This document shows positions 2,157 through 20,780 of a stretch of 23,048 nucleotides of DNA, piece after piece. Position 1 is the stretch's first letter, and every line of letters starts with the position of its first letter. The notes below the pieces were generated by a model. The model was not told where the DNA came from. It made no database searches and worked only from the letters and a program-made list of their open reading frames with translations. The stretch lies in contig NW_021836710.1 in the NCBI RefSeq assembly GCF_006345805.1, positions 1 through 23,048 on the forward strand, given 5' to 3'. The translations under genes were made by a program, and so were the position numbers. This DNA is from Octopus sinensis. Lineage: Eukaryota.

Positions 2157-2395
2157 TGGTCTTTCAAAATGTGACCGCGTGTGTACCGTTGGCGATTTTT
2201 TTCCCTCTGTCTTTCCTTCTCTGGATCTTTCCTTCTCCTATGTTTCCGACGATGAGCTCCGCTCGGAACGTTAAACCCTCCTTCTTTCCTTCTTTCCTGA
2301 GACTCCAATAATACTATATTTGTTCCACGTCCTCGCGTTGTTGTGTTTTTTTGTGCTTTCTTGTTTGGATTAATTTACATATATATATATATAAA

Positions 2396-3040
2396 TTTAA
2401 AATAACAAGAGTGAAAAATTGAATATTAATTTGACTAATATTAATTCAAAACCACTTGTCTGGCATATTGAAAAATCTGAATGTTCAGAAAAAATTATAT
2501 TACATACAAGAGGGATGACCACTAAGTGGACATCCATTATGCAAGAAGTAGAACCTCTTTGGTCTTACCACTAAGAAAGGATTGTTCTCAAGAAAATTTA
2601 GCAAACGCCAGAACATAAGCGAGCAAGACAAATGAAAAGATACAAAATATAAAACGAAACCGGGTTTGTGATTAATCTTTATATTTTGTATCTTTTCATT
2701 TATCTTGTATTCATTAGGACGGTCACACCGAAGATCTACGGACATTTACGTAATATATTAATAGTGAAACATGTATGTTAATAATACATATTATTATTGC
2801 TTTTCTTCTGTCTTGCCCGATTACGTTCTGGTGTTTGCAAAAATTTTCTTGAGAACAACTCTTAGTGGTAAGACCATAGCAGATCTACTTTTAGCATAAG
2901 TGTTGTCCACATAGTGGTCATCTCTCTCATATATATATATAATAACATTTTACTGAAATTTCAGACTTTTATATGCTAGACCACTGGTGTGAAATTGATG
3001 TTAGTTAAATTAATATGAAATTTCTCCCCCTCGTTTTAAA
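2396..3040. mobile_element. MITE/foldback-like element with ~240-bp imperfect terminal inverted repeats
   Basis: 2396-2640 is the reverse complement of about 2800-3040, e.g. GATGACCACTAAGTGGACA/TGTCCACATAGTGGTCATC, GGTCTTACCACTAAGA/TCTTAGTGGTAAGACC, TTGTTCTCAAGAAAATTT/AAATTTTCTTGAGAACAA. TA-rich microsatellite on both flanks; no ORF. Confidence 0.75.
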
Positions 3041-3155
3041 CATATATGCATATGTATATATTATTTATGTTATTACCGAATACTTTTGTTGATTATATTT
3101 ATTACATTTTTACCAAATGAAAGGCCATAATAACTTTGTACTCAAGTGTAGCAGT

Positions 3156-3370
3156 CTGATGACGTCTATCAGGCCGAAAATTCGAAGTTAGTCACCCTTC
3201 TTCAAAGAGTTTTATATATACACACATATATATGCATATATAGATGAAAGGGGTAAACGTTTTTATTTTCTCTATCAATTTCAGAAATACAACTATTAGC
3301 GGTTTGAGTTTGGCTGCACTTTCTAGTGAGTCGAATGGCCTATTATGACCATTCCTTATATTGGTTGAAT
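3156..3370 (+). mobile_element. Old diverged relative of the array unit with a decayed minimal hammerhead core
   Basis: 3249-3370 aligns by eye to the inverted unit 10817-10937 (GGGTAAA.GTTTTT..ATTTTCTC; GCGGTT...TTTGGCTG...TTTCTAGTG.GT.GAATGGCCTATTATG.CC.TTCCTT). It ends at (TA)n like the array. Upstream is CTGATGA-CGTCT-ATC-AGGCC-GAAA (3156-3179). Confidence 0.6.
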
Positions 3371-3410
3371 GTATATATATATATATACGCTTATATATGT
3401 ATGTATATAA

Positions 3411-3463
<53 letters not shown>

Positions 3464-3786
3464 TGTATGTATGTATGTATATATATATATGATGTATATA
3501 CATATATGTACATATTCATACATATATATATATGTATATAGATATATATATATATATATATATGGTATGTATATTTATATGTATATATGTATGTACGTAT
3601 GTATATTCATATGTATATATCTACACACACGCGCATAGTTCAATAGTATGAGATAACAGTGCAGAGATTCAAAGAGTTTCAAAAATTAAATCGTACAAAT
3701 TCATAAAATTTTGTTTTGATCTTATTCATCATTAACGCACACACAGATCTAGAAATACTATAACAACTGTGACACAGACATATACA

Positions 3787-5209: not shown

Positions 5210-6720
5210 AGATAATGGTAACGGTGGTGGTGGTGGTGGTTGTAGTGATAGTGGTGGAGGTAGTTGTTGTGGTAGTGGTAGTTTTTGTAGTAGTGGTATT
5301 AGAGGTATCTGTGGTGGCGGTAGTAATAGTGGTGGAAGTAGTTGTTGTGGTAGTGGTGGTGGTGGTAGTGATAATGCTGGAGGTAGTTGTTGTGTTAGTG
5401 GTAGTTGTTGTTGTAGTAGTGTTAGTGGTATCTGTGGTGGTGGTAGGGATAGTGCTGGAGGTAGTTGTTGTTGTGTTAGTGGTAGTTGTTGTGGTAGTGG
5501 TGGTGGTATCTGTGGTGGTAGTGGTCGTCGTGATAGTGGTGGAGGTAGTTGCTGTTGGGGTAGTGGTCGTGGTATCTGTGGTGGTGGCGGTGGTAGTAAT
5601 AGTGGTGGAGGTAGTTGTTGTTGGGGTAGTGCTGGTGGTATCTGTGGTGGTGGTGGTGGTGGTGGTTGGTGTCGTGGTGCTGAATTTAACTGTAGTGTTG
5701 GTGGCATCGATAATTATGGTGGTGGTGGTGATGGTGGTGCTGGTGGCGGTGCTGAGGGTGATGATGATGGTATCGGTTGACTTGGTAAAATCGATGCCAT
5801 TGATGGTGGAGGTTATGGTGATGGTGATGGTGGCGGTAGTAATAGTAGTAGGCCGAATAGTGGTGGTTGTGGCGATGGTTGTGGTAGTGACGGTGATTGT
5901 GGTAATGTTGGTGATGGTGGTGCTTGTGGTAGTGATTGTGTGAGGGGCGTAAAGGTGATGATGGTGGTGGTGGTGGTGGTGGTGGTGGTGGTTGTAGTAG
6001 TGATTGTGTGAGGGGCGTAAAGGTGATGATGGTGGTGGTGGTGGTGGTGGTGGTTGTAGTAGTGATTGTGTGAGGGGCGTAAAGGTGATGATGGTGGTGG
6101 TGGTGGTGGTGGTGGTGGTGGTTGTAGTAGTGATTGTGTGAGGGGCGTAAAGGTGATGATGGTGGTGGTGGTGGTGGTGGTGGTGGTGGTGGTTGTAGTA
6201 GTGGTGTTGGTAGTCATAGTAGTGATTGTGGGAGTGGTAGTGGTAGAGTAGTAATGGTGATGATGGTGGTGGGGGTAGTGGAGGTTGTAGTGATGGTGTT
6301 GGTAGTTGTAGTAGTAATTGTGGGGATGGTGGTGGTAGAGTGGTAAGGGTGATGATGGTGGTGGTGGTAGTTGTGGTTGTAGTGGTGGTGTTGGTAGCTG
6401 TAGTAGTGATTGTGGGGAGGGTGGTGGTACAGTGGCAATGGTGATGATGATGATGGTGGTGGTAGTGGTGGTGTTTGTAGTAGTATTGGTAGTGGTGGTG
6501 GTGGTGGTGGTTATAGTGGTGATAATAGCGATGGTTGTGGCAGTGGTGGAAATGATGGTGGTGTTGGTTGTTGTATAGGTGGTGATGGTGGCATTCGAAG
6601 TGGTGGATTGAATCGGTGGTTGTGGTGGTAGCTGTGAGGATGATGATGATGATGATGATGCTACAAGTGATGGTGTTGGTGGTGGTGGCGATAAACATAA
6701 TGGCGATGACAACGACGAGA
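5210..6720. repeat. Cryptic (GGT/AGT/GAT)n trinucleotide repeat with higher-order units
   Basis: Direct reading. Includes four 62-71-bp units starting at 5931, 5999, 6061 and 6129. Confidence 0.95.
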
Positions 6721-7227: not shown

Positions 7228-7811
7228 ATTGAGGTGTTAAATAATGAAAGAAGTTCAGTGAAGATAACGATGACGATAACGAAGATATGAGATTCGTCGA
7301 ATCTAATTAATCATTTCAAGTTATAAGCAACACTAATTAATACTGTGTGTGGGTGTGTGTGTGTGTTTCTGTTCGTAATTGCGGAAGCGGGGGTGGGGGC
7401 ATCGATTCAGTTTCTAGCTTCTCTGAGTTGTGTCTGTGAGTGTACAAGATCTTCAAGTAAGTTACAGCTCGTAGCTTCCTGAAGAGCAGCCACAGGCGAA
7501 ACTTAGAGCATCAAGAGACAGATTCGGTCAAAGTAAAATATTGCTAAGCTCTAGTATGGTATTCAGCACAATTTTTTTGCCGACAGCAGATGCTAAACGG
7601 ACACTAAATGCGTCTTCATGACAGCATTTAGTGTCATGACAGTATTTAGTGCACAGGTACACGGACAGATATATATATATATATATATTCAACAATCAAG
7701 GAACGGCCATAATAGGCCATTCACCCACTAGAAATAACAGCCAAAGCTTCAACCGCAAATAAAGATCAATTCCGTAAACAGGAGAAAATTTAAAAAAACA
7801 TTTACCCTGTA

Positions 7812-7916
7812 ATTTCTTGTACGATGCACCGTTTCGTCTGCTGTTTAATGGTAAACTAACCTGATTAAATTAAATCAAGCCAATCTTCCATAGCCCTCAG
7901 ATTCTCAGCAAGAAAT
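7812..7916 (-). ncRNA. Type I hammerhead ribozyme, unit 1 (core deletion)
   Basis: Same fold, but the core reads CTGAGA (one A lost) and one base is lost in the helix II internal loop. Either an inactive copy or a sequencing indel. Confidence 0.45.
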
Positions 7917-8297
7917 AGCCAGTCGGAACAGATATTTACACGAGGCATTTCCGACCCTGCCAAGTTAATATCTGACCTAAAATTTTCAAATCGTCGTACT
8001 CGCGCCAATTTATCGGCAGCAAATAAATATAAGCCGTCGATTCCATTACGGAATTAACCAGAAAATTCATAATTAATCAATATAGGGTGGTCAAAAAAAT
8101 TTTTGTAGAATTCCTTTTGCCACCAGCGGCCAGTGGGAAAAAATTAAATAGTCATAGACCATTTTTAAGTTCAACATCAACAATCAAGGAACGGCCATAA
8201 TAGCCATTCACCCACTAGAAATAACAGCCAAACTTCAACCGCAAATAAAGATCAATTCCGTAAACAGGAGAAAATTTAAAAAAACATTTACCCTGTA

Positions 8298-8403
8298 ATT
8301 TCTTGTACGATGCACCGTTTCGTCTGCTGTTTAATGGTAAACTAACCTGATTAAATTAAATCAAGCCAATCTCCATAGGCCCTCAGATTCTTCAGCAAGA
8401 AAT
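8298..8403 (-). ncRNA. Type I hammerhead ribozyme, unit 2
   Basis: Core intact; 1-nt deletion in the distal helix II extension; predicted cut 8305/8306. Confidence 0.7.
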
Positions 8404-8789
8404 AGCCAAGTCGGAACAGATATTTACACGAGGTATTTCCGACCCTGCCAAGTTAATATCTGACCTAAAATTTTCAAATCGTCGTACTCGCGCCAAATTT
8501 ATCGGCAGCAAATAAATATAAGCCGTCGATTCCATTACGGAATTAACCAGAAAATTCATAATTAATCAATATAGGGTGGTGAAAAAAATTTTTGTAGAAT
8601 TCCTTTTGCCACCAGCGGCCCAGTGGGAAAAAATTAAATAGTCATAGACCATTTTTAAGTTCAACATCAACAATCAAGGAACGGCCATAATAGGCCATTC
8701 ACCCACTAGAAAAAACAGCCAAAGCTTCAACCGCAAATAAAGATCAATTCCGTAAACAGGAGAAAATTTAAAAAAACATTTACCCTGTA

Positions 8790-8896
8790 ATTTCTTGTAC
8801 GATGCACCGTTTCGTCTGCTGTTTAATGGTAAACTAACCTGATTAAATTAAATCAAGCCAATCTTCCATAGGCCCTCAGATTCTTCAGCAAGAAAT
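8790..8896 (-). ncRNA. Type I hammerhead ribozyme, unit 3
   Basis: Consensus 107-nt motif, core intact; predicted cut 8797/8798. Confidence 0.75.
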
Positions 8897-9284
8897 AGCC
8901 AAGTCGGAACAGATATTTACACGAGGCATTTCCGACCCTGCCAAGTTAATATCTGACCTAAAATTTTCAAATCGTCGCACTCGCGCCAAATTTATCGGCA
9001 GCAAATAATATAAGCCGTCGATTCCATTACGGAATTAACCAGAAAATTCATAATTAATCAATATAGGGTGGTGAAAAAAATTTTTGTAGAATTCCTTTTG
9101 CCACCAGCGGCCCAGTGGGGGAAAAAATTAAATAGTCATAGACCATTTTTAAGTTCAACATCAACAATCAAGGAACGGCCATAATAGGCCATTCACCCAC
9201 TAGAAATAACAGCCAAAGCTTCAACCGCAAATAAAGATCAATTCCGTAAACAGGAGAAAATTTAAAAAAAACATTTACCCTGTA

Positions 9285-9391
9285 ATTTCTTGTACGATGC
9301 ACCGTTTCGTCTGCTGTTTAATGGTAAACTAACCTGATTAAATTAAATCAAGCCAATCTTCCATAGGCCCTCAGATTCTTCAGCAAGAAAT
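9285..9391 (-). ncRNA. Type I hammerhead ribozyme, unit 4
   Basis: Consensus 107-nt motif, core intact; predicted cut 9292/9293. Confidence 0.75.
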
Positions 9392-9777
9392 AGCCAAGTC
9401 GGAACAGATATTTACACGAGGCATTTCCGACCCTGCCAAGTTAATATCTGACCTAAAATTTTCAAATCGTCGCACTCGCGCCAAATTTATCGGCAGCAAA
9501 TAAATATAAGCCGTCGATTCCATTACGGAATTAACCAGAAAATTCATAATTAATCAATATAGGGTGGTGAAAAAAATTTTTGTAGAATTCCTTTTGCCAC
9601 CAGCGGCCCAGTGGGAAAAAATTAAATAGTCATAGACCATTTTTAAGTTCAACATCAACAATCAAGGAACGGCCATAATAGGCCATTCACCCACTAGAAA
9701 TAACAGCCAAAGCTTCAACCGCAAATAAAGATCAATTCCGTAAACAGGAGAAAATTAAAAAAAACATTTACCCTGTA

Positions 9778-9884
9778 ATTTCTTGTACGATGCACCGTTT
9801 CGTCTGCTGTTTAATGGTAAACTAACCTGATTAAATTAAATCAAGCCAATCTTCCATAGGCCCTCAGATTCTTCAGCAAGAAAT
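9778..9884 (-). ncRNA. Type I hammerhead ribozyme, unit 5
   Basis: Consensus 107-nt motif, core intact; predicted cut 9785/9786. Confidence 0.75.
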
Positions 9885-10275
9885 AGCCAAGTCGGAACAG
9901 ATATTTACACGAGGCATTTCCGACCCTGCCAAGTTAATATCTGACCTAAAATTTTCAAATCGTCGCACTCGCGCCAAATTTATCGGCAGCAAATAAATAT
10001 AAGCCGTCGATTCCATTACGGAATTAACCAGAAAATTCATAATTAATCAATATAGGGTGGTGAAAAAAATTTTTGTAGAATTCCTTTTGCCACCAGCGGC
10101 CCAGTGGGAAAAAATTAAATAGTCATAGACCATTTTTAAGTTCAACATCAACTCAACAATCAAGGAACGGCCATAATAGGCCATTCACCCACTAGAAATA
10201 ACAGCCAAAGCTTCAACCGCAAATAAAGATCAATTCCGTAAACAGGAGAAAATTAAAAAAAACATTTACCCTGTA

Positions 10276-10382
10276 ATTTCTTGTACGATGCACCGTTTCG
10301 TCTGCTGTTTAATGGTAAACTAACCTGATTAAATTAAATCAAGCCAATCTTCCATAGGCCCTCAGATTCTTCAGCAAGAAAT
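10276..10382 (-). ncRNA. Type I hammerhead ribozyme, unit 6
   Basis: Consensus 107-nt motif, core intact; predicted cut 10283/10284. Confidence 0.75.
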
Positions 10383-10519
10383 AGCCAAGTCGGAACAGAT
10401 ATTTACACGAGGCATTTCCGACCCTGCCAAGTTAATATCTGACCTAAAATTTTCAAATCGTCGCACTCGCGCCAAATTATCGCGCAGCAAATAAATATAA
10501 GCCGTCGATTCCATTACGG

Positions 10520-11046
10520 AATTTTTTTCACCACCCTATATTGATTAATTATGAATTTTCTGGTTAATTCCGTAATGGAATCGACGGCTTATATTTATTT
10601 GCTGCCGATAAATTTGGCGCGAGTGCGACGATTTGAAAATTTTAGGTCAGATATTAACTTGGCAGGGTCGGAAATGCCTCGTGTAAATATCTGTTCCGAC
10701 TTGGCTATTTCTTGCTGAAGAATCTGAGGGCCTATGGAAGATTGGCTTGATTTAATTTAATCAGTTTAGTTTACCATTAAACAGCAGACGAAACGGTGCA
10801 TCGTACAAGAAATTACAGGGTAAATGTTTTTTTTAATTTTCTCCTGTTTACGGAATTGATCTTTATTTGCGGTTGAAGCTTTGGCTGTTATTTCTAGTGG
10901 GTGAATGGCCTATTATGGCCGTTCCTTGATTGTTGATGTTGAACTTAAAAATGGTCTATGACTATTCAATTTTTCCCACTGGGCCGCTGGTGGCAAAAGG
11001 AATTCTACAAAAATTTTTTTCACCACCCTATATTGATTAATTATGA

Positions 11047-11048
<2 letters not shown>
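10520..11048 (+). mobile_element. Inverted ~1.07-unit copy of the same repeat (fold-back arm)
   Basis: Reverse complement of the array unit from TTTTTTTCACCACC (10522) to ATTATGAAT (11048), followed directly by (AT)n. AATT at 10520-10523 is shared by both orientations. Confidence 0.9.
10707..10813 (+). ncRNA. Type I hammerhead ribozyme (inverted copy)
   Basis: Helix I ATTTCTTG 10707-10714 / CAAGAAAT 10806-10813. Core CTGAAGA 10715-10721. Helix II TCTG 10723-10726 / CAGA 10785-10788 plus a long distal stem. C-GAAA 10789-10793. Helix III ACGG-TGCA-TCGT 10793-10804. GTA triplet, predicted cut 10805/10806. Pair 10.1-11.1 is A.C. Confidence 0.75.
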
Positions 11049-11082
<34 letters not shown>

Positions 11083-11099
11083 ATATTATAATATAATAT

Positions 11100-11180
<81 letters not shown>

Positions 11181-11386
11181 GTATGTATACATACATATAC
11201 GATGGGCTACTTTCAGTTTCTGTATATCAAAGCCACTCACAAGGCTTTGATCGGCCCGAGGCCGTGGGAGTGAACACGGGGCCATGTGTTTGGTATACAA
11301 GCTATTTACCAACCGCCACTCTTGCGCTTTTGTATGTATATATATGTATATACATACATACATAAATACATACATACATACATACA

Positions 11387-11420: not shown

Positions 11421-11761
11421 GAATAATATATCAGTTGAATAAATTGACGACATGGTCTTGTTATAACGTTTTTTGTTAATGTATTTAAAAAAGAAATTTT
11501 TACAATGTTGAAGTGTGTTAAATATTGAAAGAATATTTATAATGTTCAGAAAGTTAAACTTTATGAAATTTATAAACATTACTAAATATTTTTTTATTGT
11601 TTAACACACTTCAACATTGCAAAAAAAAAAAGAAGTTTTTAAATGCAATAATAATAAAAACCTTAGAACCACACCATGTTGAAACTTCTTTCAATTGATA
11701 TAAATATAGAGAGAGATAGAGACAAAGATAGATAGATCGATAGATAGATACATAGATAGAT

Positions 11762-18299: not shown

Positions 18300-18392
<93 letters not shown>
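18300..18392. repeat. (ATT)n microsatellite
   Basis: Direct reading. Confidence 0.98.
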
Positions 18393-18903
18393 GAGTAAGA
18401 GAGCAGTGCATGCCATCAAAGTGACACTGGGGTAAAATATACACCAGACACATGCATCACAACCATGTGTGCGCGACATGGTAATCTCATATCAAGATAA
18501 ACAGCGCATGACCTTGCAGGTGGGGCCCAGTTAAAATTTTCTTTTGGTTGAGTAACCCATCCCGCTCAAAAGGTCCCTGAATAAGGGTTGTTTAAGGATG
18601 TTGAAAGAACCACCCATGTTGCCAAAGGTGAATTGTTAAAACCCCAAAGAATCCCTCTCAACACATGGCTATGATGCTCCCTCACTACTTCTGCTCGTGA
18701 TCAGAGATGAACATATCGTCAGCCACTAAGGGACATGCTCAACTGGTTAAGGTCAAACAACTGACAAGCAAATCTGTGGTATTGAGCAGAATCTTTGCTG
18801 TAGTCCATCTTTTATACCAAGACAAAACAATGTACATGATAACACTTCCAATCAGTTAAGATCAGAAGCCATGAGAGTCACTGACTCGTACTGCATCAGG
18901 GCA
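18393..18903 (-). mobile_element. Interspersed repeat, probable LINE 3' UTR with (AAT)n tail (RTE-like)
   Basis: Homologous copy in the opposite orientation at 20462-20770. (ATT)n arrays on both sides (18300-18392, 18903-19062). The family assignment is inference. Confidence 0.55.
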
Positions 18904-19371: not shown

Positions 19372-19394
19372 AATTATCATCGTCGTCGTCGTCG

Positions 19395-19443
<49 letters not shown>

Positions 19444-19731
19444 AATCTTCAGTTATCATCATCATAACCATCATCTTCAATCATCATCATCATCATCATC
19501 ATCACTACTATCACCATCGCCATCATCATCATCATCATCATCATCATAATCTTCAGTTATCATCATCATCATCATCATCATCATCTTCAATCATCATCAT
19601 CATCATCATCACCACCTCCACTTCACCACCACCACCACAAACAACAACAACAACAACACCAATACCAACACAATCATCGTGCAATATCATCACCAACAGT
19701 ATCTCTATCAACAACACCACCATTATCACCA

Positions 19732-19765
<34 letters not shown>

Positions 19766-20060
19766 TCCACCACCACCACCACCATCATCATCACCATTAC
19801 CACTGCCACCATCATCACCGCCGCTACCACCACCACTACCGCCACAGCCACCACCACTACCACCACCATCACCATCCTTATCAGTATCATGATTATTATT
19901 TACGAATCATCATCATCATCATCACTACCACCACCATCATCATCATCACCACCACCACTGCCACCATCATCACCACCGCTACCACCACAACCACCGCCAC
20001 AGCCACCACCACCACCACCATCCTTATCAGTATCATGATTATTATTAACGAATTTATCAT
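19372..20060. repeat. (CAT)n/(CAC)n field with two internal duplications (~104-bp and ~146-bp period)
   Basis: CATAATCTTCAGTTATC at 19441 and 19545; CCATCCTTATCAGTATCATGATTATTATT at 19872 and 20018. Confidence 0.9.
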
Positions 20061-20461: not shown

Positions 20462-20780
20462 CCATGTGTTGAGAGAGGAATTCTTTGGGACTTGAATAAT
20501 GCACCTCTGGTAACATCGGTGTTTCGTTCTATTCAGGGACCTTCTGAGCGGGATGAGCTTCTACACCACAGGAATATTCTAACGGGGCCCCGCCTGCAAG
20601 GTCATGCGCTGCTTAATTAGATGTAATGTCACCATGTCACGCAGATATGGTTGTAATGCACGGGCCTGGTGAACCCTTAATAAACGGGTAGTCATGATGG
20701 GTATACTGGGTTTCGTATACATTTGTGACCACAGTGTCACTTTGATGGCATGTATTGCTCTCTCACTTTATAATAATAAA
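20462..20780 (+). mobile_element. Second, more diverged and truncated copy of the 18393-18903 repeat
   Basis: CCATGTGTTGAGAG...GCCTGCAAGGTCATGCGCTG...CAGTGTCACTTTGATGGCATG...CTCTCAC then TAATAATAA; reverse complement of 18393-18670. Confidence 0.7.

What the first reader, a model, noticed from the sequence alone, without database searches (positions are those of the whole stretch)
7689..11048. Tandem array of ~493-nt hammerhead-ribozyme units: candidate circular-RNA retrozyme
Seen: six direct copies and one inverted copy of a ~490-bp unit. Each carries all type I hammerhead parts in the correct order on one strand: helix I AUUUCUUG/CAAGAAAU (8 bp), CUGAAGA, helix II, C-GAAA, helix III ACGG/UCGU and a GUA cleavage triplet. 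Predicted cuts on the minus strand (7819, 8305, 8797, 9292, 9785, 10283) would release 486-498-nt monomers. Established: animal non-LTR retrozymes are tandem repeats with type I hammerheads, give circular RNAs, and are thought to be mobilised by Penelope-like element enzymes; as I recall, reported monomers are about 170-400 nt. Inference: this is such an element, with a rather long monomer, in a probable cephalopod. I cannot tell whether the family is already described.
Basis: partly seen in the sequence, partly recalled or inferred. Interest (0 to 1): 0.93.

Follow-up and report, generated by a model that had tools for sequence, protein, structure and literature searches.

The report
Hammerhead-ribozyme retrozyme array, PLE-style insertion
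This is a tandem array of a 493-bp non-coding repeat in which each unit carries a near-canonical type I hammerhead self-cleaving ribozyme; it is a new member of the known animal 'retrozyme' class, and the shape of the insertion fits mobilisation by Penelope-like retroelement enzymes.

Summary
A 493-bp tandem array (7689-10523, 5.75 units, 98-99% identical) adjoins a 529-bp inverted copy (10520-11048). Six are intact; one has a 1-nt core deletion. The motif is not a chance match: about 1e-4 expected per unit and 0.002-0.005 per window. It still scores only 18 bits against RF00163 (gathering score 34), because helix II carries a 58-68-nt hairpin insert and the 10.1/11.1 pair is A.C rather than the conserved G-C.

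The inverted copy lies at the sense 5' end of the array. Both outer ends are sense 3' ends running into (TA)n. The two halves meet at a 4-nt AATT microhomology. A second, 74%-identical fragment (3243-3368) runs from about the predicted cleavage site to the same unit position (131) where the array ends, again next to (TA)n. These features match published Penelope-like element insertion behaviour.

The 493-nt size lies within the reported range (51-972 bp). No outside copies, transcripts or host identity could be obtained, so cleavage, circular RNA and covariation remain untested. Verdict: a new member of a known kind, of moderate interest.

The parts
7689..10523 (-). Direct tandem array of the 493-nt unit, with the hammerhead-sense strand on the minus strand. 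In unit coordinates (1 = first base after the predicted cut) it runs from 254 at window 10523, through five full units, to 131 at window 7689.
   Evidence: TRF period 493, 5.8 copies, 98%; blastn mapping of the monomer.
10276..10382 (-). Hammerhead motif, intact (A17 at 10284; cut between 10284 and 10283).
9778..9884 (-). Hammerhead motif, intact; this is the reference copy (A17 at 9786).
   Evidence: RF00163, 18.0 bits, model positions 1-45. The unconstrained MFE is the three-way junction at -29.5 kcal/mol, z = -3.44, with 0 of 200 shuffles as stable.
9285..9391 (-). Hammerhead motif, intact (A17 at 9293).
8790..8896 (-). Hammerhead motif, intact (A17 at 8798).
8298..8403 (-). Hammerhead motif with an intact core and a 1-nt deletion in the helix II extension (A17 at 8306).
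7812..7916 (-). Hammerhead motif with a core deletion (CUGAGA instead of CUGAAGA), predicted inactive (A17 at 7820). The unit holding it carries 7 single-base deletions, 6 of them in short homopolymer runs, which could be assembly errors.
10520..11048 (+). Inverted copy of 1.07 units, sense on the plus strand, running unit 208 to 493 and then 1 to 244. It lies against the sense 5' end of the direct array.
   Evidence: (pairs I1, I3).
10707..10813 (+). Hammerhead motif of the inverted copy, intact (A17 at 10805).
10520..10523 (.). Head-to-head junction: the palindromic tetranucleotide AATT is shared by both copies (microhomology).
   Evidence: Overlapping blastn ends; sequence read.
7669..7688 (.). 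(TA)n tract directly abutting the sense 3' end of the direct array.
   Evidence: family D7; 14 of 14 match to (TA)n.
11049..11199 (.). (TA)n-rich microsatellite directly abutting the sense 3' end of the inverted copy.
   Evidence: 14 of 14.
3243..3368 (+). Old, diverged solo fragment of the same family (74% identity). It covers unit positions from about 1-12 to 131, starting near the predicted hammerhead cut and ending at the same unit position as the array. TA-rich sequence precedes it and (TATA)n at 3372-3620 follows it.
   Evidence: blastn E = 1e-14; nhmmer E = 2e-7; 0 of 300 shuffles reach the score. Upstream sequence shows no similarity to unit 132-493 (75 of 300 shuffles reach the score). 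No flank beyond the TA tract is shared.

Best explanation
The locus is one insertion of a non-autonomous, non-coding retroelement of the animal non-LTR retrozyme class.

Shown by the sequence:
- A 493-bp, 37% GC unit is repeated head to tail.
- Each unit encodes a type I hammerhead on one strand. It has an 8-bp helix I, a complete CUGAAGA...GAAA...GUA core, and a 4-bp helix III with a palindromic UGCA loop. Helix II has a 4-bp base extended by a stable hairpin of about 60 nt.

Inferred life cycle, from the published retrozyme model:
- The array is transcribed as a multimer.
- The hammerheads cut after each GUA, either as single motifs or as dimers through a 12-bp intermolecular helix III.
- A host RNA ligase circularises the monomers.
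- A Penelope-like element (PLE) reverse transcriptase/GIY-YIG endonuclease, supplied in trans, copies this RNA into new sites.

Inferred from the geometry of this locus:
- A break was made in a (TA)n microsatellite and both DNA 3' ends primed cDNA synthesis.
- One cDNA started at unit position 131 and ran 5.75 units. The other started at position 244 and ran 1.07 units.
- Both cDNAs exceed one unit and cross the cleavage site, so the template was a circle or an uncleaved multimer.
- The two cDNAs were joined head to head at an AATT microhomology.

The separate old fragment (3243-3368) is read as an earlier insertion. It would have started at the same RT start site (position 131) and run off at or near the hammerhead-generated 5' end of a linear RNA.
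For: - Array and motifs.
- Hammerhead: the full RF00163 model is matched once per unit on one strand only. The E-value of 1.3 is for 4227 families, so it is about 3e-4 for the single family named in advance.
- Chance: the descriptor hit rate in simulated sequence is about 1e-4 per unit, and there are no hits elsewhere in the window even at relaxed settings.
- Fold: the three-way junction is the unconstrained MFE (z = -3.44). The helix II insert is a hairpin of -23.9 kcal/mol (z = -5.3).
- Accessibility: the active fold costs only about 1 kcal/mol in the full circle and 0.1-3 kcal/mol in nascent transcripts. Helix III alone is -1.2 kcal/mol, against -19.5 kcal/mol as an intermolecular duplex.
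- Monomer: the sense circle is more stable than shuffles (z = -3.9, 58% paired).
- Non-coding: the longest ORF in a unit is 55 aa and there are no Pfam domains.
- Insertion signature: unit coordinates of the ends and the junction. All three sense 3' ends run into (TA)n, against 0.9-2% for random positions. A second diverged fragment ends at the same unit position 131.
- Literature: retrozyme definition and model (PMC7229834). PLE insertions are partial tandems with an inverted 5'-truncated copy at the 5' end and show a microsatellite insertion bias, with (TA)n often the preferred target of Naiad PLEs (PMC8557442). The PLE enzyme cleaves and extends both DNA strands and starts reverse transcription at fixed internal RNA sites that define insertion ends (PMC11167929). 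Retrozymes are related to PLE terminal repeats, with consensus lengths of 51-972 bp (bioRxiv 10.64898/2026.07.22.740005).
Against: - The Rfam score is 18 bits against a gathering score of 34.
- The 10.1/11.1 pair is A.C in all seven copies, whereas G10.1-C11.1 is described as highly conserved. Activity may therefore be low or lost.
- The long helix II leaves no canonical loop 2 to contact helix I.
- There is no covariation evidence: the copies differ at only 30 alignment columns and none of the changes is compensatory.
- No related sequence was found in any collection available, so there is no evidence on copy number, transcripts or circles.
- The window holds no PLE coding remnant.
- The two 3' ends of the main insertion differ (131 and 244), and no 30-40-bp PLE 'tail' is seen.
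- The 5' limit of the old fragment is fuzzy by about 12 nt at 74% identity, and there is only one such fragment.
- The inverted copy could be an assembly artefact or a DNA-level fold-back.
Confidence: 0.65

Rival explanations
1. It is an ordinary satellite or transposon-derived tandem repeat that carries an inactive hammerhead relic. The array grew by DNA-level processes such as unequal crossing-over and replication slippage, and makes no functional self-cleaving or circular RNA today.
For: A.C replaces the conserved G10.1-C11.1 pair in every copy. The motif is below Rfam's gathering score. One copy has a core deletion. Variants shared by neighbouring units (unit position 29 in u4/u5, position 313 in u1/u2) suggest local DNA-level homogenisation. 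There is no evidence of transcripts.
Against: The rest of the core and all three helices are intact in six of seven copies at 98-99% identity, so there is little decay. The hammerhead fold is the MFE of the motif. DNA-level growth does not explain why both outer ends are sense 3' ends in (TA)n. It also does not explain the inverted copy at the 5' end, or why an independent diverged fragment ends at the same unit position.
Confidence: 0.18
2. The repeat is not an independent retrozyme family. It is the terminal-repeat (pLTR) portion of an autonomous Penelope-like element, or an internally deleted copy of one, laid down as a partial tandem. The solo fragment at 3243-3368 would then be a heavily 5'-truncated copy of that element.
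For: PLEs carry hammerheads in their pLTRs, insert as partial tandems with inverted 5' copies, and show strong 5' truncation. Retrozyme consensus sequences match PLE termini. The fragment shares only the last 131 nt before the 3' terminus.
Against: Five complete identical units with no trace of an RT or endonuclease ORF fit the retrozyme definition better than a pLTR-ORF-pLTR structure. Metazoan PLE hammerheads are usually the minimal form, with almost no helix III, whereas this one has a 4-bp helix III and an 8-bp helix I. The distinction is partly semantic if retrozymes are PLE derivatives.
Confidence: 0.12
3. The hammerhead is a chance match within an unrelated tandem repeat.
For: At about 1e-7 hits per nt, a multi-gigabase genome should hold hundreds of chance matches at relaxed stringency. 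One simulated hit in 20 Mb was as good as the real one.
Against: The expectation is about 1e-4 for this unit and 0.002-0.005 for this window. The match sits in exactly the genomic context typical of real ones: a tandem repeat of a few hundred bp, AT-rich, with a palindromic loop 3 and a PLE-like insertion architecture.
Confidence: 0.03
4. A sub-claim only: the inverted copy (10520-11048) is not a product of double-ended priming. It is either a later DNA-level fold-back duplication or a long-read assembly artefact (a palindromic chimera).
For: The inverted copy shares the T variant at unit position 29 with the two adjacent units u4 and u5. Unit u1 carries homopolymer-type indels that suggest error-prone reads. 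Perfect palindromes are a known type of assembly artefact (my own knowledge).
Against: The arms are asymmetric: one is truncated at unit 254 and the other at 208, leaving a 42-nt spacer. The inverted copy has its own private variants and its own direct junction with (TA)n. This architecture is the one published for PLEs.
Confidence: 0.25

Closest known systems
Metazoan non-LTR retrozymes with type I hammerheads (Cervera & de la Pena 2020, PMC7229834), for example the Mytilus galloprovincialis 350-390-bp repeats
   Same: Both are head-to-tail repeats of a few hundred bp, AT-rich and non-coding, with one type I hammerhead per unit on one strand and a self-paired monomer RNA. Like the mussel hammerheads, this one lacks the archetypal loop 1/loop 2 contacts.
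   Different: The unit is longer than in that paper (493 against 170-400 nt) but lies within the 51-972 bp range reported later. Helix II carries a hairpin insert of about 60 nt, and 10.1/11.1 is A.C. Expression and circularity are unknown here.
Penelope-like elements and their pLTR hammerheads (PMC4209133, PMC8557442, PMC11167929)
   Same: Shared features are the tandem arrangement, an inverted 5'-truncated copy at the 5' end, (TA)n as target (the preferred target reported for Naiad PLEs), insertion ends at a fixed internal position, and a palindromic helix III/loop 3 that allows a dimeric ribozyme.
   Different: There is no RT or GIY-YIG ORF and no 30-40-bp tail. The hammerhead has full helices I and III, unlike the minimal metazoan PLE form. 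The conserved G10.1-C11.1 pair is missing.
Classical hammerhead satellites: newt satellite 2, Schistosoma Sm-alpha, and the Dolichopoda cave-cricket pDo500 (the last of these, with monomers of about 500 bp, is from my own knowledge; cave-cricket hammerheads are mentioned in PMC6155905)
   Same: These are satellite repeats transcribed into self-cleaving multimers. They use a dimeric hammerhead mode when helix III is weak, and at least one has a comparable monomer length.
   Different: The sequence family is different. Those hammerheads have a short helix II capped by a loop that contacts helix I.
Rfam RF00163, Hammerhead_1
   Same: All 45 model positions align, and the core nucleotides and three helices are present.
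   Different: The score is 18 bits against a gathering score of 34, because of the 58-nt insert in helix II and the non-canonical 10.1/11.1 pair.

Membership tests
Hammerhead ribozyme, type I (RF00163) | Conserved core C3-U4-G5-A6-N7-G8-A9, G12-A13-A14, A15.1-U16.1 and H17 in the right order on one strand | tested here: met
   CUGAAGA ... GAAA ... (A)CGG/UCG(U) followed by A17, in six of seven copies; one copy has a 1-nt deletion in CUGAAGA.
Hammerhead ribozyme, type I (RF00163) | Three helices around the core, with helix I open and helices II and III closed | tested here: met
   The unconstrained MFE of the 107-nt motif gives helix I of 8 bp, a closed helix II and a closed helix III. z = -3.44, with 0 of 200 shuffles as stable.
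Hammerhead ribozyme, type I (RF00163) | Conserved G10.1-C11.1 pair at the base of helix II | tested here: not met
   A.C in all seven copies, flagged as non-canonical by cmscan. The conservation is stated in PMC4209133. A U.U mismatch at the base of helix II is reported in axolotl HHR_Amex2.
Hammerhead ribozyme, type I (RF00163) | Score at or above Rfam's gathering threshold | tested here: not met
   18.0 bits against 34. No hit in gathering mode.
Hammerhead ribozyme, type I (RF00163) | Loop 1/loop 2 tertiary contacts | tested here: inconclusive
   Helix I is a perfect 8-bp stem without a bulge. After 4 bp, helix II opens into an internal loop and continues as a long hairpin. [quoted passage not shown]
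Hammerhead ribozyme, type I (RF00163) | Compensatory changes in helices I-III among family members | tested here: inconclusive
   Only near-identical copies are available. Of 30 variable alignment columns, none is compensatory. No outside copies were found.
Hammerhead ribozyme, type I (RF00163) | Site-specific self-cleavage after H17 | not testable with these tools
   This needs in vitro transcription. The solo fragment starting near unit position 1 is only a hint of cleavage in vivo.
Animal non-LTR retrozyme | Short tandem DNA repeats, each with a type I hammerhead, without LTR, PBS or PPT | tested here: met
   493-bp period, 5.75 direct units, one motif per unit. No terminal long repeats other than the unit itself.
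Animal non-LTR retrozyme | Low GC content (below 50%) and non-coding | tested here: met
   GC is 37%. The longest ORF in a unit is 55 aa and has no homologues.
Animal non-LTR retrozyme | Monomer RNA predicted to be stable and highly self-paired | tested here: met
   The circular MFE is -133.9 kcal/mol with z = -3.9 and 58% of bases paired. This is moderately structured and not a rod.
Animal non-LTR retrozyme | Dispersed copies at several loci (mobility), with target-site duplications when present | tested here: inconclusive
   One additional diverged fragment lies 4.3 kb away with no shared flanks. A target-site duplication cannot be read because both flanks are (TA)n. The genome-wide copy number is unknown.
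Animal non-LTR retrozyme | Expression as monomeric linear and circular RNAs | not testable with these tools
   No transcriptome of the source organism is accessible.
Animal non-LTR retrozyme | Coexistence with Penelope-like elements in the same genome | not testable with these tools
   No PLE coding remnant in the 23-kb window. The rest of the genome is not available.
PLE-type insertion architecture | Partial tandem with an inverted 5'-truncated copy adjacent to the 5' end | tested here: met
   The sense 5' end of the array (unit 254, window 10523) abuts the 5' end of the inverted copy (unit 208). The architecture is described in PMC8557442.
PLE-type insertion architecture | Insertion into microsatellites, with (TA)n reported as a preferred target of Naiad PLEs | tested here: met
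   All three sense 3' ends are followed by (TA)n at 14/14, 14/14 and 13/14 matches. The background is 0.9% for a perfect match and 2.1% for 13 or more of 14.
PLE-type insertion architecture | Insertion ends fall on fixed internal RT start sites, with an optional 30-40-bp tail | tested here: inconclusive
   Two of the three 3' ends coincide at unit 131. The third lies at 244, which is 113 nt away and not 30-40 nt. No tail was recognised.

The most novel reading that the evidence does not exclude
The window may preserve a 'fossil record' of the whole retrozyme transposition cycle. The solo fragment (3243-3368) would be a cDNA that began at a fixed internal RT start site (unit 131) and ran off at the 5' end created by hammerhead self-cleavage, which would be genomic evidence of ribozyme activity in vivo. 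The main locus would be a double-ended, target-primed, rolling-circle reverse transcription of a circular RNA into a (TA)n break. If dozens of loci confirmed this, it would show mechanistically that a PLE enzyme mobilises retrozyme circles by site-specific internal initiation on both DNA ends, in an invertebrate. It would also show that a hammerhead with A.C at 10.1/11.1 and a 60-nt helix II insert is functional.
Probability: 0.3. Interest if true: 0.6.

Novelty: new member of a known kind. Interest (0 to 1): 0.4.

Why it matters
Retrozymes are an abundant source of small circular RNAs in animals, made through a pathway different from back-splicing, and how they are mobilised is still inferred and not demonstrated. 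This locus adds three things.

- It is a family with an atypical hammerhead (long helix II insert, A.C at 10.1/11.1) that standard Rfam annotation misses, which shows that threshold-based surveys undercount such elements.
- It is an unusually legible insertion. Its geometry (both ends primed in a (TA)n tract, cDNAs longer than one unit, a head-to-head microhomology joint, a recurrent 3' terminus) is what recent PLE biochemistry predicts, which supports the idea that retrozymes are non-autonomous PLE passengers.
- It gives a concrete hypothesis that can be tested genome-wide: an RT start at unit position 131.

None of this changes the current picture of the field. It is supporting detail for it.

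Tried and rejected
- **Rfam at gathering thresholds over the whole window:** no hit. The hammerhead appears only in E-value mode.
- **Other Rfam hits in the region** (WsnRNA46, MIR834 and mir-5365 at 10461-10625; mir-297 and mir-466 at 11125-11200): rejected as the junction hairpin and TG/TA microsatellite.
- **Finding other copies through pseudo-ORFs of the unit:** three exact look-ups and one homology search returned nothing.
- **DNA pattern scans:** I used the hammerhead pattern and the block conserved between the two diverged copies, against the metagenome, prokaryotic-genome and viral collections. All returned zero. These collections are unlikely to hold animal DNA, so this says nothing about copy number in the host.
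- **Identifying the source organism:** exact look-up of long window ORFs and a tRNA/SINE scan gave nothing, so 'cephalopod' remains unverified.
- **PLE coding remnants:** all ORFs of 90 aa or more are translated microsatellites, and the ten best segments of normal complexity have no Pfam domain.
- **Does the old fragment extend upstream through a decayed hammerhead?** A permissive local alignment suggested so, and there is a CUGAUGA...CGAAA string at about 3157-3180. The shuffle test shows no significant similarity, the descriptor and Rfam find no hammerhead there, and the string forms a simple hairpin. Rejected.
- **Segmental duplication as the origin of the old fragment:** rejected, because similarity stops inside the TA tract.
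- **A ribozyme on the opposite polarity:** none found.

Full report
**1. The observation**

Tandem Repeats Finder reports one large array at 7689-10523, with period 493, 5.8 copies and 98% matches. The repeat finder and a blastn of one monomer against the window add an inverted copy at 10520-11048 that is 99% complementary to the direct units.

I numbered the unit from the predicted cleavage site: position 1 is C1.1 at window 9785 on the minus strand, and position 493 is A17 at window 9293. On that numbering:
- The direct array has its sense strand on the minus strand. It runs from unit 254 (window 10523) through five complete units to unit 131 (window 7689).
- The inverted copy has its sense strand on the plus strand. 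It runs from unit 208 to 493 and then from 1 to 244.

The hammerhead anchor sequence occurs six times on the minus strand and once on the plus strand.

Six motifs are intact. The leftmost (7812-7916) has lost one A of CUGAAGA. Its unit carries seven single-base deletions, six of them in short homopolymer runs. That looks like long-read indel error or local decay.

**2. Is it a hammerhead, and is it more than chance?**

No Rfam family reaches its gathering score anywhere in the window. In E-value mode, RF00163 (type I hammerhead) matches once per unit, on the sense strand only, at 18.0 bits against a gathering score of 34.

The alignment covers all 45 model positions and contains every core nucleotide. 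Score is lost on a 58-nt insertion in helix II and on a non-canonical A.C at 10.1/11.1. The reported E-value of 1.3 is corrected for 4227 families. For the single family named in advance it is about 3e-4 over the 3.9-kb region.

My own descriptor asked for CUGANGA, a closed helix II, GAAA, a helix III starting with A15.1-U16.1, H17 and helix I. It recovers the six intact motifs and nothing else in the window, even at relaxed settings.

In 20 Mb of simulated sequence with the unit's dinucleotide composition, the descriptor hit twice. That is about 1e-4 per unit and 0.002-0.005 per window. A whole animal genome would contain hundreds of chance matches. A chance match inside this particular repeat is very unlikely.

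The folding results agree:
- The unconstrained minimum-free-energy fold of the 107-nt motif is the hammerhead three-way junction (-29.5 kcal/mol, z = -3.44, 0 of 200 shuffles as stable).
- The helix II insert is a very stable hairpin (-23.9 kcal/mol, z = -5.3).
- Forcing the active fold costs only about 1 kcal/mol in the full circular monomer and 0.1-3 kcal/mol in nascent transcripts.
- Helix III alone is weak (-1.2 kcal/mol). Its UGCA loop is palindromic, so two copies can form a 12-bp duplex (-19.5 kcal/mol). This allows the dimeric 'double hammerhead' mode described for newt, viroid and PLE hammerheads.

**3. What counts against activity**

G10.1-C11.1 is described as highly conserved in canonical and PLE hammerheads. 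Here it is A.C in every copy. There is a partial precedent: the axolotl HHR_Amex2 motif has a U.U mismatch at the base of helix II.

The long helix II also leaves no canonical loop 2 to dock on helix I. Mussel retrozyme hammerheads likewise lack most of the conserved nucleotides for those contacts, and they still cleave at about 0.1 per minute.

The copies in the window differ at only 30 alignment columns, none of them compensatory. Covariation therefore cannot be assessed.

**4. The unit as a whole**

The unit is 37% GC. Its longest ORF is 55 aa and has no homologues. The sense-strand circle is significantly more stable than shuffled controls (-133.9 kcal/mol, z = -3.9, 58% paired) and more so than the antisense circle (z = -2.85).

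These are the sequence-level criteria for metazoan non-LTR retrozymes. The size is not exceptional. The 2020 paper reports RNAs of 170-400 nt, but a 2026 survey reports consensus lengths of 51-972 bp.

**5.

(a) Both outer ends of the structure are sense 3' ends, and both run directly into perfect (TA)n tracts (7669-7688 and 11049 onward). A random position in this window is followed by a perfect 14-nt (TA)n only 0.9% of the time.

(b) The inverted copy sits against the sense 5' end of the direct array. The two are joined at a shared palindromic AATT (10520-10523). The direct copy is truncated at unit 254 and the inverted copy at unit 208.

(c) A second fragment of the same family lies at 3243-3368 on the plus strand. 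It is 74% identical (blastn E = 1e-14, nhmmer E = 2e-7, 0 of 300 shuffles as good).
- It ends ...GGTTGA|ATGTATATAT, against ...TGTTGA|ATATATAT for the array. That is the same unit position (131), again followed by a (TA)n tract (3372-3620).
- Its similarity begins within about 12 nt of the predicted cleavage site, after TA-rich sequence.
- Sequence upstream of it shows no significant similarity to the rest of the unit (75 of 300 shuffles reach the score).
- No flank beyond the TA tract is shared with the main locus. It is therefore an independent, older insertion and not a local duplication.

**6. How this maps onto known biology**

PLE insertions are described as partial tandems, often with an inverted 5'-truncated copy adjacent to the 5' end. 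They show an insertion bias for microsatellites, and (TA)n often serves as the preferred target of Naiad PLEs (PMC8557442).

A purified PLE protein cleaves and extends both DNA strands. It starts reverse transcription at fixed internal sites of the element RNA that are not homologous to the target, and genomic insertion ends fall on those sites (PMC11167929). Retrozymes have been proposed, and recently argued phylogenetically, to be non-autonomous PLE derivatives.

The locus fits a single event, as follows:
- A break is made in a (TA)n tract.
- Both 3'-OH ends prime cDNA synthesis on retrozyme RNA. One cDNA starts at unit 131 and runs 2835 nt. The other starts at unit 244 and runs 529 nt.
- The two cDNAs are joined head to head by microhomology.

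Both cDNAs exceed one unit and cross the cleavage site. The template was therefore a circle (rolling-circle reverse transcription) or an uncleaved multimer.

The solo fragment fits an earlier event that started at the same site (131) and ran off near the hammerhead-generated 5' end of a linear RNA.

These steps are inference from geometry, not demonstration. Weak points:
- The two 3' ends of the main locus differ.
- No 30-40-bp 'tail' is seen.
- Only one solo fragment is available.
- The palindromic junction could be an assembly artefact or a later fold-back. The inverted copy shares one variant with the two adjacent units.

**7. What could not be done**

No related sequence could be retrieved. 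Exact and homology look-ups with unit pseudo-ORFs all failed. So did DNA pattern scans of the metagenome, prokaryotic-genome and viral collections.

The source organism could not be identified, so 'probable cephalopod' is unverified. The searchable literature holds no description of a cephalopod hammerhead retrozyme. That literature is incomplete, so I cannot say the family is undescribed.

The window contains no PLE coding remnant and no credible gene at all.

**8. Verdict**

The retrozyme interpretation is supported and strengthened by the PLE-like insertion signature. Ribozyme activity, circular RNA and family-wide conservation remain untested, and the hammerhead departs from the consensus at one conserved pair.

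This is a new member of a known kind. Its practical value is twofold. It is an example of a variant that threshold-based annotation misses, and it is a clean locus from which to test the model of PLE-mediated, double-ended, internally initiated mobilisation. Interest is 0.4.

Noticed in passing
window 3243-3368 (+), followed by (TATA)n at 3372-3620: A diverged (74% identical) solo fragment of the retrozyme unit covers only the stretch from about the hammerhead cut site to unit position 131. It ends at the same position as the main array, next to (TA)n.
   Followed up: yes
window 2379-2639 and 2800-3061, with a local palindrome at 2624-2707: An inverted repeat of about 680 bp with arms 78% identical over 269 nt, just upstream of the old retrozyme fragment. 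It has no similarity to the retrozyme unit, no hammerhead and only hairpin-type Rfam noise. It may be a MITE or another fold-back insertion.
   Followed up: partly
window 18382-18668 and 20462-20779: Three collinear blocks of inverted repeat (80-85% identical, about 290 nt in total) enclose about 1.8 kb that includes ATC/CCA microsatellites. They could be terminal inverted repeats of a DNA transposon, or two inverted copies of a short interspersed element.
   Followed up: no
window 5223-6511 and 19376-20022: A large GGT-rich minisatellite with higher-order periods of 68, 92, 123 and 130 nt (GC skew up to +0.8), and a complementary-type (ATC/CCA)n block 13 kb away. These produce the long artefactual ORFs of the window (up to 603 aa).
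   Followed up: no
window 7820-8305 (unit u1): This one unit carries seven single-base deletions, six of them in short homopolymer runs and one in the hammerhead core. The pattern is typical of long-read indel errors, so the 'dead' ribozyme copy may be an assembly artefact.
   Followed up: partly
window 7600-7651: An 18-nt tandem duplication (TCATGACAGCATTTAGTG, two copies) overlaps an 11-nt inverted repeat (ACACTAAATGC / GCATTTAGTGT), immediately beside the array's left (TA)n flank. Its significance is unknown.
   Followed up: no
window 11497-11625: A near-perfect palindrome (132 nt, 82% self-complementary) about 300 nt beyond the right-hand microsatellite flank.
   Followed up: no
unit positions 127-137 (for example window 9649-9659), and window 10153-10162 in unit u5: The pentamer GTTGA occurs twice at the site where insertions end (GTTGA-T-GTTGA), three times in unit u5, and once in both the array's terminal partial unit and the old fragment. 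This copy-number instability lies exactly at the putative reverse-transcription start site. The other 3' end (unit 244) is also preceded by TTGATT...TGA.
   Followed up: partly
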